Numbered from the stretch's first letter, positions 9,652 to 22,025 are shown. The stretch is 64,000 nucleotides of DNA from Botryllus schlosseri (GCA_051294905.1 CM119379.1:18910001-18974000), one strand, 5' to 3'. The notes: generated by a model not told the origin, from the sequence alone. Program-made: numbers and translations.

Positions 9652-9827
9652 TAGTCAAAACAAATCACTTGAAAGATGTTCACGAACACCCTACCTCTGT
9701 ATCGTGAACGAGACATGCTGAACAAGTCGACAAATCCACATTGCATCCTTGCAGACCTGAAACACAGATCTCTACACATTTCAAACTTTCTAGATGTGCT
9801 GCAAAAACAACTGATCGTTACTCTAGC

Positions 9828-9900
9828 TCAGTTCATATAAGAACGGGCCAGTTCATATCACATGCATTCGCATCTTACTGGCGGAATTAGGTCACATCAT
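9828..9900 (-). ncRNA. SNORD47: SNORD47-like copy 9
   Basis: ATGATGT, conserved guides, CTGA 71 nt from the acceptor. Confidence 0.78.
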
Positions 9901-10107
9901 AGGCAGATAGAATTCGAAATTGATCACTTCCAAGGTTGTTATTTATAATCAACCCCACCTGCATTGCCAATCAGACGTGTTGAACAGTTCATATTCAAAT
10001 CGCATCTTCGCCAAACAGAAAAAAAGCTCTTTTCCTCCAGCCCTGAAACGCTTCAAATTTTTATACCGAACTAGGCGGTAAACAAAAGAAATCACAATTA
10101 TTCCAGC

Positions 10108-15173: not shown

Positions 15174-18100
15174 TTAGTACGGTTTCTGCCTGCCCCTCGA
15201 CGAACCGCCTCCTCTGCCCATCTTCGAACGGAACGACTGCCCGCCGAATCCACTGGCATTGCTCGCGCCGGTGCCATTTCCGTAAGAACCTGAGAGAAAT
15301 AACATTGAAAATGCTGACCACGCAGGACAACGGTACTACACTGCAAAATTACCATAAACGTCTTGTCCATAGCTGAAATCTTCGTTGTAAGATCTGTGGA
15401 GTAGAGGATCAGAGAAATAGACAAGACACGGCATGAATAGAATTGATCACGCTTACCCGTCGCCAAAACCATCACCGCCAAATCCGCCATCGTAAGCGCT
15501 GTCAAAATTGTCACCGTAGCCTTCGTAGCTCTGATCAAACGAAGTTCCTCCATACCCATCGTAGCTCTGTAAGTTCAGCACATCAAACGTGCTATAAATT
15601 ACGTCCACAAGTGGGGAAGGGGATAACATATCAAGTATCCTACCACTATAGTCTTGATTACCAATTGTTAAATTTGCAAAGAGATACGGGATGACAAGCG
15701 GTCAGACTATTTGTTGTTGGTAGGGCTGGGTTATGAATCACATCAGTCAAATCACTCATTGTGACATCACAACAGAACATAATATGTCAAAGATCAAATG
15801 AGTATCTGTTATGCCGCCACACATAATATAAGGCCTGTCATCCATCACATTGAAGACACTAGGGCATTGTTTCGACCATACGGGTTGCATTGCACTTAAT
15901 GACAATGTTGTGGGATGATCATGACTTTGGAAATGGTTTTTTTCAGTATGTTCGTAGCTTTGTTTCGTACGCTGCAATACGGCAAATCAAAGTTACGAGA
16001 CTTCCACCAAATAAAAAGCATTTTAAATGCAGTTTTGCCTAACAGCTGCATACCGACCGTGACGTGTACTCACATAGTCCTCGGCAAAGTTTTCAGCAGC
16101 CGCAGCAGCCTGCTGCATCTGGGCAAAATTCTGCGACTGTCCGCGTCCCCTGCCTCGCCCTGAGTCAACAATTACAAAATTAACAATGACGGTGCAATCA
16201 CGTGGTACACATACCTCTACCTCCTCTCCCGCCGCCAGTAGCCCCACCGCCACGGCCTCCTCCGCCGCCTCTACCCCCTCTGGAAAAACTGCCGCCCCGC
16301 GGATTCTGCCCTCGTCCACCGCCGCCACGGCCTCCTCGGGCCCTGCCACGCATAGCCGGGTGAGACATGGCAGCCTGCATGCCGAATTGAGCTTCGGTGG
16401 CTTCGTCAACAACGAGTAGTTTTTGGATTTCGGCAGCAGCCCGACCGAGATTGACGAAAGCCTGAAACAAGTCACGTTGAAGGTTTGACTAACTGGAGTG
16501 CATCAATTCTGACTCTACTATTAGGCTCGAGTAAAGAGTACTTCAATAACACTCATGGAATCACAAGGCTGTAAATGATGTGCAAAGTTGAAATATGTTA
16601 ACTTATGCGACCACAAAGAAAAACAGTTCCAGTTCGAAATCACATTGAAGAAGATTTCAATTATTAACATTTCATTCTTCTTTACGCCAAATATAGCTAA
16701 AATGATGCATAAAGAACAAATATGCATCTTTTACGGGACCACAAACAAATTAAATGCAGTACAAGATCACATCGCAGATAATTGAAACACACATACTATA
16801 TAAACCTATGCTTTCATCTTTATGACAACACTGCATAGCTTTGTCATTTTCAAAAACGTGCATAATACCTTGTACGTTATGATCCAACAGATTTTGATTT
16901 CAAGGCTTATACAGTAGTATCATAACTTTACAACTTTCATTTATAAATTATAGCTTGGGTGGAAGGGGCGTTCAATTCGAGTACCCGAAACAAACTTCTC
17001 TCAGTATTCGAATGAAGAGTCTTCATATAGAGCAATTATCAATACTCAAATAATCGTGCCTATAATAGTCGCGTCCAAAATCTTGGGACAAGGCACACAA
17101 TGCAGACATATAGAATACCTGAGGCACTGGTCCGACAGCTGAGATGTGTACATGCAGAGGGTAGTTCAGATGACTGTATTTCTCGTCAAAGTCTTTAAGT
17201 TCCTCAGCCTAGACGTTAAAGCAACACTATAGCAGTAAGATCGGGCACGGCAGACAAGGGGCATCCCTAAAAGACGGAGAAGCGGAGGCAGCGGAGACAG
17301 CGGAGGCAGCGGAGAACGGACCCTAAAACGCGGAAGCAACGGAGACGGCAGAGAGAGCCAAAAATGGCGATTCCTAAAAGACGGAGACAGCGGACCTAGC
17401 GGAGAGCGGAGCTTTCGGTCATTAACCTTTATAGACACGCGCGACATAGCGGACGGATACTGAAAGCGGAGTTCGGGACCCTGCGAAATGGACATAGCGG
17501 ACGGTTATATAATATAGAAAGCGGAGATCAGGGCGTATCCGAAGATGTTTCGAAGCAGTGGAGAATAACGGAGAAGTCAGCCATGCAAGTTCAAGGCCAA
17601 TTGGGCGACTGATTGCCCGTCGATGAGATGACATAGCGGGCGGTTATATAGTACAAAGAAAGCGGAGTTCGGGGCGTATCGGAAGATGTTTCGAAGCAGT
17701 GGAGAATAACGGAGAAGTCAGCCATGCCAGTTCAAGGCCAATTGGGCGACTGATTGCCCATCGATGAGATGACATAGCAGACGGTTATATCGTTATAATA
17801 TACTGAAAGCGGAGTTTGGGGCGTAGCGAAATATATTTCGAAACAGCAGAGAATAACGGAGAAGTCAGCCATGCGAGTTTCAGGCCAATTTGGTGACTGA
17901 TTGCCCATCGATGAGATGACATAGCGGACGGTTATAATATACTGAAAGCGGAGTTCGGGGCGCAGCGAAATATATTTCGAAACAGCAGAGAATAACGGAG
18001 AAGTCAGCCATGCGAGTTTCAGGCCAATTTGGTGACTGATTGCCCATCGATGAGATGACATAGCGGACGGTTATAATATACTGAAAGCGGAGTTCCAGGG

Positions 18101-21082
18101 CGTATCGGAAGATGTTTCGAAGCAGTGGAGAATAACGGAGAAGTCAGCCATGCGAGTTCAAGGCCAATTGGCGACTGCTGATTGCCCGTCGATGAGATGA
18201 CACAGCGGGCGGTTATATAATACAAAGAAAGCGGAGTTCGGGGCGTATCGGAAGATGTTTCGAAGCAGTGGAGAATAACGGAGAAGTCAGCCATATGCAA
18301 GTTCAAGGCCAATTGGGCGACTGATTGCCCAATGCCCATCGATGAGATGACATAGCGGGCGGTTATATAGTACAAAGAAAGCGGAGTTCGGGGCGTATCG
18401 GAAGATGTTTCGAAGCAGTGGAGAATAACGGTTTGATTTATCACATCACGTTGTTCAGATATTATATATGTTGAATATTTCTACTTTTTCGAGGTAATCA
18501 AGTAGATTTGGGCTATTTCCGGTACTTACTGAAGTGGTAATGTTTCGCAATTACTTCAACATCTACCTGAACAGTATTCTGGATGAAATAATTACATTTG
18601 CAATTCGGATTTTGTAAAGTAGAAAGTAGTTCAGTATAATATTCCACAACTATCAACAGTTAAATTGTCATACGAAACGCGTCCGCTATGTCATCTCATC
18701 GATGGGCAAGCAATCACCGAATTGGCCTGAAACTCGCATGGCAGACTTCTCCGTTATTCTCTGCTGTTTCGAAATATATTTCGCTACGCCCCAAACTCCG
18801 CTTTCAGTATATTATAACCGTCCGCTATGTCATCTCATCGATGGGCAATCAGTCACCAAATTGGCCTTGAACTTGCATGGCTGACTTCTCCGCTATTCTC
18901 CACTGCTTCGAAACATCTTCCGATACGCCCTGATCTCCGCTTTCTATATTATATAACCGTCCGCTATGTCTATTTCGCGGGGCCCCGAACTCCGCTTTCA
19001 GTATCCGTCCGCTATGTCATCTCATCGAAGGGCAATCAGTCGCCAATTGGCCTTGAACTCGCATGGCTGACTTCTCCGTTATTCTCCACTGCTTCGAAAC
19101 ATCTCCCGATACGCCCTGATCTCCGCTTTCTGTATTATATAACCGTCCGCTATGTCTATTTCGCGGCGCCCCGAACTCCGCTTTCAGTATCCGTCCGCTA
19201 TGTCATCTCATCGAAGGGCAATCAGTCGCCAATTGGCCTTGAACTCGCATGGCTGACTTCTCCGTTATTCTCCACTGCTTCGAAACATCTTCCGATACGC
19301 CCCGAACTCCGCTTTCCTTGTATTATATAACCGCCCGCTATGTCATCTCATCGATGGGCAATCAGTCGCCCAATTGGCCTTGAACTTGCATATGGCTGAC
19401 TTCTCCGTTATTCTGCACTGCTTCGAAACATCTTCCGATACGCCCCGAACTCCGCTTTCCTTGTATTATATAACCGCCCGCTATGTCATCTCATCGATGG
19501 GCAATCAGTCGCCCAATTGGCCTTGAACTTGCATGGCTGACTTCTCCGCTATTCTCCACTGCTTCGAAACATCTTCCGATACGCCCTGATCTCCGCTTTC
19601 TATATTATATAACCGTCCGCTATGTCTATTTCGCGGGGCCCCGAACTCCGCTTCAGTATCCGTCCGCTATGTCATCTCATCGATGGGCAATCAGTCGCCC
19701 AATTGGCCTTGAACTTGCATATGGCTGACTTCTCCGTTATTCTCCACTGCTTCGAAACATCTTCCGATACGCCCCGAACTCCGCTTTCCTTGTATTATAT
19801 AACCGCCCGCTATGTCATCTCATCGATGGGCAATCAGTCGCCCAATTGGCCTTGAACTTGCATGGCTGACTTCTCCGTTATTCTCCACTGCTTCGAAACA
19901 TCTTCCGATACGCCCCGATCTCCGCTTTCTATATTATATAACTGTCCGCTATGTCCATTTCGCGGGGTCCCGGACTCCGCTTTCAGTATCCGTCCGCTAT
20001 GTCGCGCGTGTCTATAAAGGTTAATGACCGAAAGCTCCGCTCTCCGCTAGGTCCGCTGTCTCCGTCTTTTAGGAATCGGCATTTTTGGCTCTCTCCGCCG
20101 TCTCCGTTGCTTCTGCGTTTTAGAGTCCGTTCTCCGCTGCCTCCGCTGTCTCCGCTGCCTCCGCTTCTCCGTCTTTTAGGGATGCCCGCAGACAAGACAG
20201 AATCGCACAACATACCTTTTTGCGGTCAGCTTCTCTGACAGAGCCTTTACCGAGAACAGCCATCTTTGTGTTGGTTAGTTCTTGAAGGCCCTTCATTGTT
20301 GCTCCGCCAGGGCCGATCAGGCGTCCCACGAAGTTTACCTAAAATTGCAAACATTCATTCAAATCAAAAAAGCAATTCATCAAATTTAGGCATTATACTC
20401 TTTGGCAATTGACAATCAGCTACAACTTCAAACTTGATCGTCAATTTACATTATCGATCATTTTTCAAGAAAACGTGCATTCATTTTGCTACATACATGC
20501 TTTCAAGTGCACAATATATTGCATTGGATACATAATTGAATGCTGAATTCAGTATGATTTGTCGTAAAAGTCAATGGACATTTTGTTTGGCCACACGACT
20601 CTCATCTCTTATACTACACGGTAATAGGTGTAATCAACATATAGCAATGATAATAATTATAAATGGATAAATGGTGATGTGGGTTTATTGTCAAAGATAA
20701 TTTCAATGTTGCGGTATCAAATTAGTGGCTTACCGAGGGAAATTTCTCAGCAGGAACAAGAATATCGCATTCAACTTTCTGTGGTCTACCAGAAACGTCG
20801 AGCAGGACTTTCTTGGAACTCGTCTTGGGCGCTTCTTTCTTAGGATTCTTGATGTTTTCGATTTCTGCAGCAAATACCGATTGTTGAAATAGATTATTAC
20901 ATGTTCAAAGTTTATTCGAGATATCTAGGATCATTCAGAAGTTATTTCGAAAAAACGCAGTGCACCGGAGAAAATTCTGTCTTACCTTCAGAAATCAGCC
21001 GGACTGCATGTTCGAACGAAGGATCGATACTGTCTTTTTCAGCCATAAGCTCAGGAAGGTACTTGCCATCATTTTGCTCCAT
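15174..21082 (-). CDS. KHDRBS: KH-domain STAR-family RNA-binding protein (Sam68/SLM-like), 9 coding exons, 346 aa
   Basis: Exons 20986-21082, 20734-20864, 20216-20338, 17119-17208, 16215-16461, 16074-16159, 15457-15566, 15353-15393, 15174-15289, all GT-AG and phase-consistent (1041 nt). QUA1 '[17 protein letters not shown]', KH '[12 protein letters not shown]...[10 protein letters not shown]', RG-rich region, Tyr-rich tail ending RGRQKPY*. AATAAA at 14833-14838. Confidence 0.95.
15760..16000. repeat. Interspersed repeat (MITE fragment) in a KHDRBS intron
   Basis: Aligns by eye with 39488-39750 (shared aatgttgtgggatgatcatgactttggaaatg); a related tagggctggg / cccagcccta end is at 15721 and about 39920. 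Confidence 0.6.
17259..20187. mobile_element. Foldback/Mutator-like element: 2.9-kb palindrome with minisatellite arms
   Basis: Perfect 9-bp TSD gcagacaag (17250-17258, 20188-20196). TIR gggcatccctaaaagacggagaagcgg. Arms 17259-18432 and about 18681-20187 are inverted and built from about 140-bp units (about 6.5 left, about 8 right) plus 9-bp gcggag repeats; loop about 250 bp; no transposase. Confidence 0.9.
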
Positions 21083-21233
21083 TTTGGTATGACTTATGAT
21101 AGAACTTTAGCGAAGAGATGAAGATGCTACTGTACAGCCAACGCGCCGAAATCTATGCGATAAGTAATAGACTACGCTACACGTACACGAGGAAGACTTA
21201 CGTTTGAACAGGTCGCAATGCAAATGAATTCTC

Positions 21234-21272
21234 TGCGCATGCGCGAAGAGAAAAAAGCTATGGTCACGTGAC
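21234..21272. promoter_or_regulatory. Putative KHDRBS promoter motifs: NRF1-type TGCGCATGCGCG and palindromic E-box GTCACGTGAC
   Basis: Exact motif matches at 21234-21245 and 21263-21272, 150-190 bp upstream of the ATG, flanking a minus-strand pyrimidine tract. Confidence 0.5.
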
Positions 21273-21559
21273 AAAGTGCCGAAAGCACGCTGAAAGCACG
21301 CCAAGTGCACATTCGGTTGTTGCCCATTGAGCTTGATTTAATATAGAAAGGATTTTGAAAAAATATCTTATCTCTCGGTGTTGCACCATGAAATAGCAGT
21401 TTACTGAGGTCAATGAACATTTTATTGAGTAATATTGGTCATCCCTATTCAATATTGTCTGGGTCAGCACTTCAGCAGCAGAGATTGTCGGATTCCCATA
21501 TCTCGGAATCCGGATCTATCCGACTCCGGCTGGCAATTTGAAATACAGAGTCCTAAGTG

Positions 21560-22025
21560 TAGGGTTACCATACGTCCTCCTTTTTCGAGTTTGTGAAAAT
21601 GTCCTCCGAGGACGCCTAAATGTCCTCCTTTTTGAGATTTTGTACTCTTTTTTGGTAATTTTGGTTAAATATAGTGCCAAATTCGACTGAGGTACAGTAA
21701 ATCAGCACTGACGTAACGCTCCGGCGGCTATTTCGGTAGCTGAGCCGGAAAGTTGACCTTTTTTAGTCAACCACGTATAAATTTGAAAGAAAAACTGTAT
21801 TTTGGGTGCTGAGCGAGAAAGATGACCTTCCTTTAGTCAACCACCTATAAATTTGAAAGAAAAACTGTATTTTGGGGGCTGAGCGCGTAAGTTGACCTTT
21901 TCTTTAGTCAACCGACCGCGCAGTGGGAAAAATTTACCATTTTTTAAAGATTTACCTCCGGTATTCTAAGTTAGAAAATTTTGAAAAGTGTCCTCCTTTC
22001 CCTATTCCAAAATATGGTAACCCTA
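21560..22025. mobile_element. hAT-like MITE (TAGGGTTACCATA family) with internal tandem repeats of about 60 bp
   Basis: TIR tagggttaccata / tatggtaacccta; TSD cctaagtg / cctaaatg. Confidence 0.85.

What the first reader, a model, noticed from the sequence alone, without database searches (positions are those of the whole stretch)
17209..20215. A 69-nt intron of a splicing-regulator gene inflated to 3 kb by a giant hairpin transposon
Seen: the element starts 28 nt from the donor and ends 50 nt from the acceptor. Removing it and one TSD leaves a 69-nt intron. Its arms can pair over more than 1.1 kb, and the arms differ in minisatellite unit number (about 6.5 versus about 8). Inference: in the pre-mRNA the fold-back would bring the two splice sites back to near-ancestral distance, making the insertion tolerable. 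It would also create a long dsRNA substrate for ADAR or Dicer inside the KH-domain coding region. The near-identical arms and intact TSD suggest a young insertion or inter-arm gene conversion.
Basis: partly seen in the sequence, partly recalled or inferred. Interest (0 to 1): 0.7.

Follow-up and report, generated by a model that had tools for sequence, protein, structure and literature searches.

The report
Foldback transposon inside a Sam68-like gene intron
A 2.9-kb hairpin-shaped "jumping gene" of a young Mutator-like family has landed in a tiny 69-base intron of a sea-squirt splicing-regulator gene, and the messenger RNA is still joined correctly; this is a tidy but ordinary transposon insertion.

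Summary
Window 17209-20215 is a 3007-nt GT..AG, phase-0 intron on the minus strand that splits the KH domain of a KHDRBS/Sam68-like gene. It holds a 2929-bp element (17259-20187) with perfect termini and an exact 9-bp target-site duplication. Removing the element and one duplicate leaves 69 nt.

The element is a non-autonomous, internally deleted member of an abundant, young Foldback-type Mutator-like family. At least 40 ends are 95-100% identical, and 9 of 10 other paired copies have exact 9-bp duplications. Complete copies of 11-15 kb encode an intact 1013-aa protein with MULE DDE core, SWIM, Ulp1 protease and PHD finger.

The pre-mRNA is predicted to fold into a 1101-bp hairpin (-2352 versus -1017 kcal/mol for shuffles). 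RNA contigs from two studies, plus one raw read from a third, show the exact exon-exon junction. The genotype of those animals is unknown.

Not shown: that the hairpin is needed for splicing, any editing or siRNA, or arm-to-arm conversion. This copy's arms are 97.4% alike, below the family's within-element mean.

Verdict: a real feature and a new member of a known kind, of modest interest.

The parts
20216..20338 (-). Upstream exon (123 nt, 41 codons) encoding the N-terminal half of the KH domain
   Evidence: Pfam KH-I_KHDC4-BBP E 2.3e-8 and KH_1 E 6.7e-7. Best PDB matches are KHDRBS3 and KHDRBS1. Exon ends are confirmed by RNA joints.
20188..20215 (-). 5' intron flank: donor GTATGT plus 28 nt up to the element, including one copy of the duplication
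   Evidence: Sequence; RNA joint 17207->20215, cut +1.
20188..20196 (.). Target-site duplication, right copy (GCAGACAAG)
   Evidence: Exact 9-bp match with 17250-17258; longer matches fail.
18680..20187 (.). Right arm (1508 bp; transcribed first in the pre-mRNA): terminal motif, 9-nt subterminal repeats at 20126-20171, and 8 units of the roughly 139-nt repeat
18432..18679 (.). AT-rich central loop (248 bp, 31% GC), a remnant of the internal sequence next to the right arm of the autonomous element
   Evidence: 97% identical over 269 bp to positions 9758-10026 of the 11,263-bp copy on C14; GC content.
17259..18431 (.). Left arm (1173 bp): terminal motif GGGCATCCC, 9-nt subterminal repeats at 17275-17320, and 6 full units plus 1 truncated unit of the 139-nt repeat (array 17491-18431)
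17250..17258 (.). Target-site duplication, left copy (GCAGACAAG)
17209..17258 (-). 3' intron flank (50 nt) with a likely branch point CTTAC (A at 17236, 27 nt from the acceptor) and acceptor TCTAG
   Evidence: Sequence. The branch-point assignment is inferred from the yUnAy consensus. This flank plus the arm's outer 72 nt (17209-17330) has no strong local structure of its own (z +2.5).
17119..17208 (-). Downstream exon (90 nt, 30 codons) encoding the C-terminal part of the KH/QUA2 region
   Evidence: Translation in phase with the upstream exon; RNA joints on both sides.

Best explanation
The 3-kb intron is a 69-nt ancestral intron that received a cut-and-paste insertion. The insert is a non-autonomous, internally deleted copy of a Foldback-type Mutator-like (MULE) DNA transposon. 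The family's own transposase made the 9-bp staggered cut that produced the duplication.

Complete copies elsewhere in the genome encode that transposase. It is a single-exon 1013-aa protein with a DDE MULE core, a SWIM zinc finger, a Ulp1/C48 protease and a PHD finger.

The insert sits between the donor (+28) and the likely branch point, which is the least constrained part of an intron. In the sense orientation it carries no poly(A) signal and none of the four strong donor heptamers searched. It is therefore removed with the intron by the ordinary spliceosome, and the gene still makes normal mRNA.

Shown: the anatomy, family membership, the coding partner and a correct exon junction in RNA. 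Inferred: the transcribed element snaps into a hairpin of about 1.1 kb that loops out 2.9 kb and leaves about 78 nt of single-stranded intron. That may help splicing, but there is no evidence that it is required.
For: - Geometry and duplication.
- Family: at least 40 scored ends at 95-100% identity out of 221 candidates. Nine of ten other paired copies have exact 9-bp duplications and one has 8 bp. Of the two complete intact-ORF copies, C14 has an exact 9-bp duplication and C2 an 8-bp one.
- Deletion derivative: the centre is 97% identical to sequence just inside the right arm of the 11,263-bp C14 copy.
- Transposase: three intact 1013-aa ORFs at 99% identity. Pfam gives Peptidase_C48 at 6e-16, MULE at 5e-5, PHD at 6e-4 and SWIM at 0.017. 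D264, D329, C350/H353, E444, W402 and the SWIM CxCx5CxH are invariant in 11 relatives.
- Transposase fold: the core model (pLDDT 86.9) best matches FAR1/FHY3/FRS, ZSWIM1/3/9 and IS256-family transposases, and ISCth4 and Hermes among solved structures.
- Termini: an imperfect palindrome (GGG...CCC) followed by subterminal repeats, as in Muta1 (PMC5499845).
- Splicing: the joint that skips exactly 3007 nt appears in X5 (2 contigs, depth 866), X8 (an 827-nt contig through five exons) and X23 (1 read). Joint depth equals that of the neighbouring joints.
- No AATAAA or ATTAAA, and none of the four strong donor heptamers searched, in the sense strand.
- Fold: -2351.8 kcal/mol against -1017 +/- 17.5 for shuffles, with 1101 inter-arm pairs and the first helix starting exactly at the element ends.
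Against: - The spliced junction would look the same from an allele without the insertion, and no DNA run showed the genotype of the RNA donors. The only hint is that X5 and X8 show none of the eight exonic differences seen in X23, so they resemble the reference haplotype.
- The Pfam MULE score (24 bits) is under the curated cut-off of 27.6.
- Repeat numbers inside the arms rest on the assembly alone. No long read was laid across them.
Confidence: 0.82

Rival explanations
1. The insertion is tolerated because of the fold-back: the hairpin restores a near-ancestral distance between the splice sites, and without it the 3-kb intron would splice poorly in this short-intron gene.
For: The predicted hairpin is extremely stable and starts at the element's first base. 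The donor-to-acceptor path falls from 3006 to about 33 steps. The other introns of this gene seen in the reads are short: 61, 121, 395 and 657 nt. Intron structures that bring splice sites closer together are documented in Drosophila (PMC2724269).
Against: There is no comparison with a non-pairing insert of equal length. The gene already handles a 657-nt intron. The genotype of the RNA donors is unknown. Long perfect dsRNA could equally hinder splicing or attract nucleases.
Confidence: 0.3
2. The paired arms trigger structure-directed, spliceosome-independent excision of the element from the pre-mRNA (SOS splicing). This would regenerate a short intron that is then spliced normally.
For: SOS splicing is triggered by base-pairing of transposon inverted repeats and is conserved from C. 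elegans to human (PMC12779559). The genome encodes a CAAP1 domain at E 1.3e-14. The arms pair over 1.1 kb.
Against: No joint near 17259/20187 appears among the listed joints in any RNA run; 18 weaker joints were not shown. For an intronic insert the spliceosome removes everything anyway, so no such step is needed. The pathway has not been tested with kilobase-long arms or in tunicates.
Confidence: 0.08
3. The intronic hairpin is processed as dsRNA, by ADAR hyper-editing or by Dicer into siRNAs. The host gene would then act as a source of silencing RNAs against the transposon family, or would itself be down-regulated.
For: Perfect helices of up to 105 bp are predicted. The genome has several adenosine-deaminase (A_deamin) loci. 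The family looks active, so the host would gain from siRNAs against it.
Against: Change types in the RNA run are symmetric: A>G 14, T>C 14, C>T 18, G>A 18. The clustered A>G sites come from reads with 7 or more other differences, so they derive from other copies. No small-RNA run was available.
Confidence: 0.15
4. Assembly artefact: the hairpin, or its size, results from mis-joined repeat reads.
For: Long inverted tandem-repeat arms are hard to assemble. No read spanning the element was examined.
Against: The ends are exact, and a 9-bp duplication of unique flanking sequence surrounds them. The flanks are single-copy. Twelve other copies have the same architecture. An artefact would not create a target-site duplication.
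Confidence: 0.03

Closest known systems
Foldback-type MULEs with a characterised transposase: Muta1 (Aedes aegypti, PMC5499845) and Tm1 (root-knot nematodes, PMC3169594)
   Same: Duplications of 8-9 bp. Terminal imperfect palindrome (GGGTCTACCC in Muta1, GGGCATCCC here) followed by subterminal tandem repeats. Unequal repeat numbers in the two arms. Non-autonomous deletion derivatives. A DDE transposase with the MULE signature.
   Different: The arms here are far longer (1.2-1.5 kb in this copy, about 6 kb in one relative), built from a 139-nt unit rather than 12-15-nt units. The transposase shows no FLYWCH hit in Pfam and carries a Ulp1 protease and a PHD finger at its C-terminus.
Rehavkus elements (Repbase; described in PMC6446971 and bioRxiv 10.1101/2024.12.02.626372)
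   Same: [quoted passage not shown]
   Different: Rehavkus is reported only from insects and annelids. No Rehavkus protein was available for comparison, so kinship is untested. A Ulp1 domain is not mentioned for Rehavkus in the papers read.
Mutator transposases carrying Ulp1 (and PHD) domains in Hydra, lancelet and plants (PMC2836005)
   Same: The same domain combination: MULE core, Ulp1/C48 and PHD. The relatives found here include Hydra, Ptychodera and Ciona proteins at 31-46% identity.
   Different: Those are Repbase entries with no foldback architecture described in the paper read. Here the protein sits between kilobase-long tandem-repeat arms.
Drosophila Foldback / FB-NOF
   Same: 9-bp duplication and arms made of tandem repeats with variable copy number (the Drosophila features are from my own knowledge). 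The nearest language-model cluster (score 0.95, 212 of 256 features) is auto-named '120.7 kDa protein in NOF-FB transposable element' and carries C48 and PHD.
   Different: No protein with that name appeared in the profile search or among the 30 best Swiss-Prot fold matches of the transposase core. The link is a lead, possibly limited to the C-terminal half.
SOS splicing of DNA transposons (PMC12779559) and long-range intron structures that bring splice sites together (PMC2724269)
   Same: An inverted-repeat transposon inside a transcribed gene whose arms can pair in the RNA.
   Different: The insert here is intronic, so ordinary splicing is enough. No structure-directed excision product was seen.

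Membership tests
Mutator-like (MULE) DNA transposons | Target-site duplication of about 9 bp (8-11) | tested here: met
   Exact 9 bp at this copy. Of the 12 other paired copies, 10 have an exact 9-bp duplication and 2 have 8 bp.
Mutator-like (MULE) DNA transposons | Terminal inverted repeats shared with an element that encodes a MULE DDE transposase | tested here: met
   The same termini flank the 11,263-bp and 15,117-bp copies that carry the intact 1013-aa ORF.
Mutator-like (MULE) DNA transposons | DDE triad with a C/D(2)H motif after the second D, and an IS256/MULE fold | tested here: met
   D264, D329, C350-x-x-H353 and E444 are invariant. Best fold matches are FAR1/FHY3, ZSWIM and IS256-family proteins, and ISCth4.
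Mutator-like (MULE) DNA transposons | Pfam MULE domain (PF10551) above the curated cut-off | tested here: inconclusive
   24.0 bits against a cut-off of 27.6, E 5.3e-5. Most relatives carry PF10551 in the precomputed annotation.
Foldback-type elements (structural class) | Long inverted arms that make up most of the element and are built of tandem subrepeats in variable, often unequal, number | tested here: met
   The arms are 2681 of 2929 bp. There are 6 versus 8 units here, and 1-37 units per arm across 13 copies, unequal in 12 of them.
Drosophila FB-NOF lineage | Protein homologous to the NOF 120.7-kDa protein | tested here: inconclusive
   The atlas cluster name is the only support. No such hit appeared.
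Rehavkus | 9-bp duplication, PHD finger in the transposase, and a minisatellite next to the terminus | tested here: met
   (PHD at E 6e-4, under the cut-off). These are shared traits only.
Rehavkus | Transposase groups with Rehavkus transposases in a tree | not testable with these tools
   No Rehavkus reference protein could be fetched.
KHDRBS / Sam68 STAR proteins (host gene) | QUA1-like N-terminal region, a KH domain of the STAR type and an RG-rich tail | tested here: met
   KH by Pfam. Closest solved structures are KHDRBS3 and KHDRBS1, ahead of SF1, QKI and GLD-1. The spliced product shows the N-terminal region and RG repeats. The splicing-regulator role is inferred from vertebrate relatives.
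SOS-splicing substrates | Excision of the element at or near its paired repeats in RNA, independent of GT..AG | tested here: not met
   No such joint is among those listed. The depth was low, so this is weak evidence.

The most novel reading that the evidence does not exclude
The kilobase hairpin is functionally read by the cell. Either it acts as a structural bridge without which this short-intron gene could not splice a 3-kb intron, or it is a substrate of a structure-directed excision pathway (SOS-type). That would make this locus a natural chordate test case in which transposon architecture itself buffers gene disruption. Because the family looks active, with three intact transposase genes, carriers and non-carriers may coexist in wild populations and allow an allele-specific test.
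Probability: 0.12. Interest if true: 0.6.

Novelty: new member of a known kind. Interest (0 to 1): 0.3.

Why it matters
Foldback-type MULEs with a recognisable, intact transposase are scarce in chordates. A 2019 survey found only one MULE sequence in a sea squirt (PMC6446971), and a full-text search for foldback, transposon and ascidian returned no paper.

This genome holds a young family with three intact 1013-aa MULE-SWIM-Ulp1-PHD genes and dozens of deletion derivatives. That makes it a candidate active DNA transposon in a tunicate and a possible genetic tool.

The insertion itself is a clean natural construct for asking whether a perfect intronic hairpin helps, hinders or is ignored by the splicing machinery. 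It does not reveal a new mechanism.

Tried and rejected
- Empty-site haplotig: both flanks are single-copy in the assembly, so presence/absence could not be judged from it.
- DNA evidence from other animals: X17 gave huge depth on the repeat but none on the unique flanks. X5 and X8 turned out to be transcript contigs. The question stays open and the single read-laying run is spent.
- RNA editing: no excess of A>G or T>C. Apparent A>G clusters at 17760-17781 sit on reads with 7 or more other differences and come from other copies. The test is underpowered.
- Inter-arm gene conversion: rejected for this copy. Left versus right is 97.4%, against a family within-element mean of 98.4% and a between-element mean of 96.3%. 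The right end is 100% identical over 230 bp to an end of the C1:35.19-Mb copy.
- Whole-protein single-sequence structure model: pLDDT 34, unusable. It was replaced by a core-domain model built with 51 sequences.
- NOF kinship: not found by the profile search or by the core fold search.
- The 13-kb pair on C11 is not one element, because it has no matching duplication.
- Earlier scan notes on this transposon family: none found by words.
Full report
**Observation**

The region was read directly and measured by script. On the minus strand, an exon ends at 20216 with the codon AAG and is followed by GTATGT. The next exon starts at 17208 after TCTAG. Both junctions are in phase 0, so the intron is 17209-20215 and 3007 nt long.

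Inside it, 17259-20187 (2929 bp) begins GGGCATCCCTAAAAGACGG and ends with the exact reverse complement; the outer 42 nt are perfectly inverted. The element is flanked by GCAGACAAG on both sides. The repeat is exactly 9 bp, and 10 bp or more fail to match. The element lies 28 nt from the donor and 50 nt from the acceptor, and removing it with one flanking copy leaves 69 nt.

Repeat finders show a 139-nt tandem array at 17491-18431 (6.6 copies) and arrays of period 139-186 at 18680-20003. A core-motif count gives 6 full units plus a truncated one on the left and 8 on the right. The arms (1173 and 1508 nt) align over 1150 columns at 94.7% identity.

**What the element is**

The terminal 187 bp has at least 40 scored matches at 95-100% identity across the 495-Mb genome, out of 221 candidates. 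Ends in opposite orientation pair up into elements of 1.0 to 15 kb. Nine of ten such pairs have an exact 9-bp duplication of unique flanking sequence and one has 8 bp. This is a mobile family that makes 9-bp staggered cuts.

Long copies carry a coding region. Three loci (C2, C13, C14) hold an intact single-exon 1013-aa ORF at 99% identity to one another, and many others are truncated or carry stop codons. The C14 copy is a complete 11,263-bp element with the same termini and the duplication ATAGCAGGA. The C2 copy is 15,117 bp with an 8-bp duplication.

Pfam finds Peptidase_C48/Ulp1 (6e-16), MULE (5e-5, just under the cut-off), PHD (6e-4) and SWIM (0.017). In an alignment with ten relatives from other animals, the following are invariant: D264, D329, C350 and H353, E444, W402, and the SWIM CxCx5CxH. 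Relatives include a Ciona protein at 41-42% identity and Hydra and Ptychodera proteins.

A core-domain model built from 51 sequences is confident (pLDDT 86.9). Its best matches are the MULE-derived FAR1/FHY3/FRS and ZSWIM proteins and IS256-family transposases. Among solved structures it matches ISCth4 and Hermes. The family is thus a Mutator-like element with foldback architecture.

The 269-bp centre of the window copy is 97% identical to the stretch just inside the right arm of the C14 copy. The window copy is therefore an internal-deletion derivative that cannot move on its own.

Unequal arm repeat numbers are the rule. Across 13 copies the arms hold 1 to 37 units, and 12 of the 13 are asymmetric. 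In Muta1, more subterminal repeats raise transposase binding and excision (PMC5499845).

In the non-tandem terminal 230 bp, arms of the same element are on average 98.4% identical and arms of different elements 96.3%. This copy's two arms are 97.4% identical. Its right end is 100% identical to an end of a copy on C1, and its left end has two private changes in 187 bp. The insertion is young, like the family, but nothing points to arm-to-arm conversion here.

**The host gene**

The spliced product starts [18 protein letters not shown] and continues through a KH domain into an RG-rich tail. The exon before the insertion matches KH domains in Pfam. It is closest to human KHDRBS3 and KHDRBS1 among solved structures, ahead of SF1, Quaking and GLD-1. 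Calling it a splicing regulator rests on what is known of vertebrate Sam68-family proteins, not on a test here.

The Ciona best hit is consistent with that.

**RNA evidence**

One call laid four runs on 15950-21900. A joint that skips exactly the 3007-nt intron (CT..AC on the plus strand) appears as follows:

- X5: 2 contigs, depth 866.
- X8: one 827-nt contig that runs through five exons, depth 161.
- X23 (raw reads): 1 read.

In X5 the neighbouring joints have similar depth (796 and 561). No exon-skipping joint is among those listed. The gene's other introns seen in the reads are 61, 121, 395 and 657 nt.

The limit of this evidence is important. The same junction would arise from an allele without the insertion, and no run gave DNA coverage of the unique flanks. 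X5 and X8 show none of the eight exonic differences that X23 carries. This hints that they share the reference haplotype, but it is only a hint.

Change types in X23 are symmetric (A>G 14, T>C 14, C>T 18, G>A 18). The clustered differences inside the element lie on reads that differ at 7 or more other sites. In addition, 24 reads run off the element end at 17255 into unrelated sequence. Most element reads therefore come from other copies. There is no sign of editing, but the test is weak.

**Fold**

The pre-mRNA segment from exon to exon (3220 nt) folds to -2351.8 kcal/mol, against -1017 +/- 17.5 for eight dinucleotide shuffles. The fold has 1101 inter-arm pairs and perfect helices of up to 105 bp, and the first 73-bp helix begins exactly at the element's two ends. 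In that structure the path from donor to acceptor is about 33 steps instead of 3006.

The 50-nt 3' flank holds a good branch-point candidate (CTTAC, A at 17236). Folded together with the arm's outer 72 nt (17209-17330), it has no strong structure of its own. The sense strand of the intron has no AATAAA or ATTAAA and none of the four strong donor heptamers searched. The hairpin idea is physically sound, but nothing shows that it is needed.

**Comparison with what is known**

- Foldback-type MULEs with 9-bp duplications and composite repeat arms are described in nematodes (PMC3169594) and mosquitoes (PMC5499845).
- Rehavkus elements combine a 9-bp duplication, a PHD finger and terminal minisatellites (PMC6446971; bioRxiv 10.1101/2024.12.02.626372).
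- Mutator transposases with Ulp1 and PHD are listed for Hydra and lancelet (PMC2836005).
- The nearest language-model cluster is named after the Drosophila NOF-FB protein, but neither a profile search nor the core fold search confirmed this.
- Intron structures that bring splice sites closer are known (PMC2724269).
- A spliceosome-independent pathway that excises transposons after their inverted repeats pair was reported in 2025 (PMC12779559). The genome has a CAAP1 domain and adenosine-deaminase loci, so the actors exist, but no excision product was seen.

**Verdict**

This is a real, cleanly delimited insertion of a new member of a known transposon kind into an intron, and it is removed by normal splicing.

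Noticed in passing
G000 C14:4479336-4490598 (L061/L062); C2:23703840-23718956 (L057/L058); C13 near 4960136-4962421 (L047): Three copies of the family carry an intact 1013-aa MULE-SWIM-Ulp1-PHD ORF at 99% identity. Two of them are complete with termini and duplications, so the family may still be active.
   Followed up: yes
G000 C1:35192752-35203523 (L032/L033): In this 10.8-kb copy the left arm has grown to 37 repeat units (about 6 kb) and the ORF has lost its first 251 residues. Its left end is 100% identical over 230 bp to the right end of the window copy. It shows how foldback arms can seed satellite-like arrays.
   Followed up: partly
window 21522-21900: A 69-70-nt tandem repeat (three units at 21729-21901) draws extreme read depth in all four runs, up to about 300,000 summed depth in X17. 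It is a very high-copy repeat of unknown kind lying just upstream of the KH gene's first coding exon.
   Followed up: partly
window 17255 (reads of run X23): 24 RNA reads match the element terminus and then continue into sequence that is not in this window. Another copy of the family is therefore embedded in a well-expressed transcript elsewhere.
   Followed up: no
window 16092, 16290, 16327, 16357, 16369, 16411, 17128, 20782: All reads of RNA run X23 differ from the reference at these eight exonic sites, while the contigs of X5 and X8 match the reference. At least two haplotypes of the gene circulate, and these sites could serve as allele tags.
   Followed up: no
window 17275-17320 and 20126-20171: A short array of 9-nt repeats (AGCGGAGGC-like, 3.8 copies) lies just inside each terminus, in the position of the transposase-binding subterminal repeats of Muta1.
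   Followed up: no
window 21197 (run X5): A contig leaves the first coding exon at 21197 into unmatched sequence. This suggests a further upstream non-coding exon outside the stretch that was laid.
   Followed up: no
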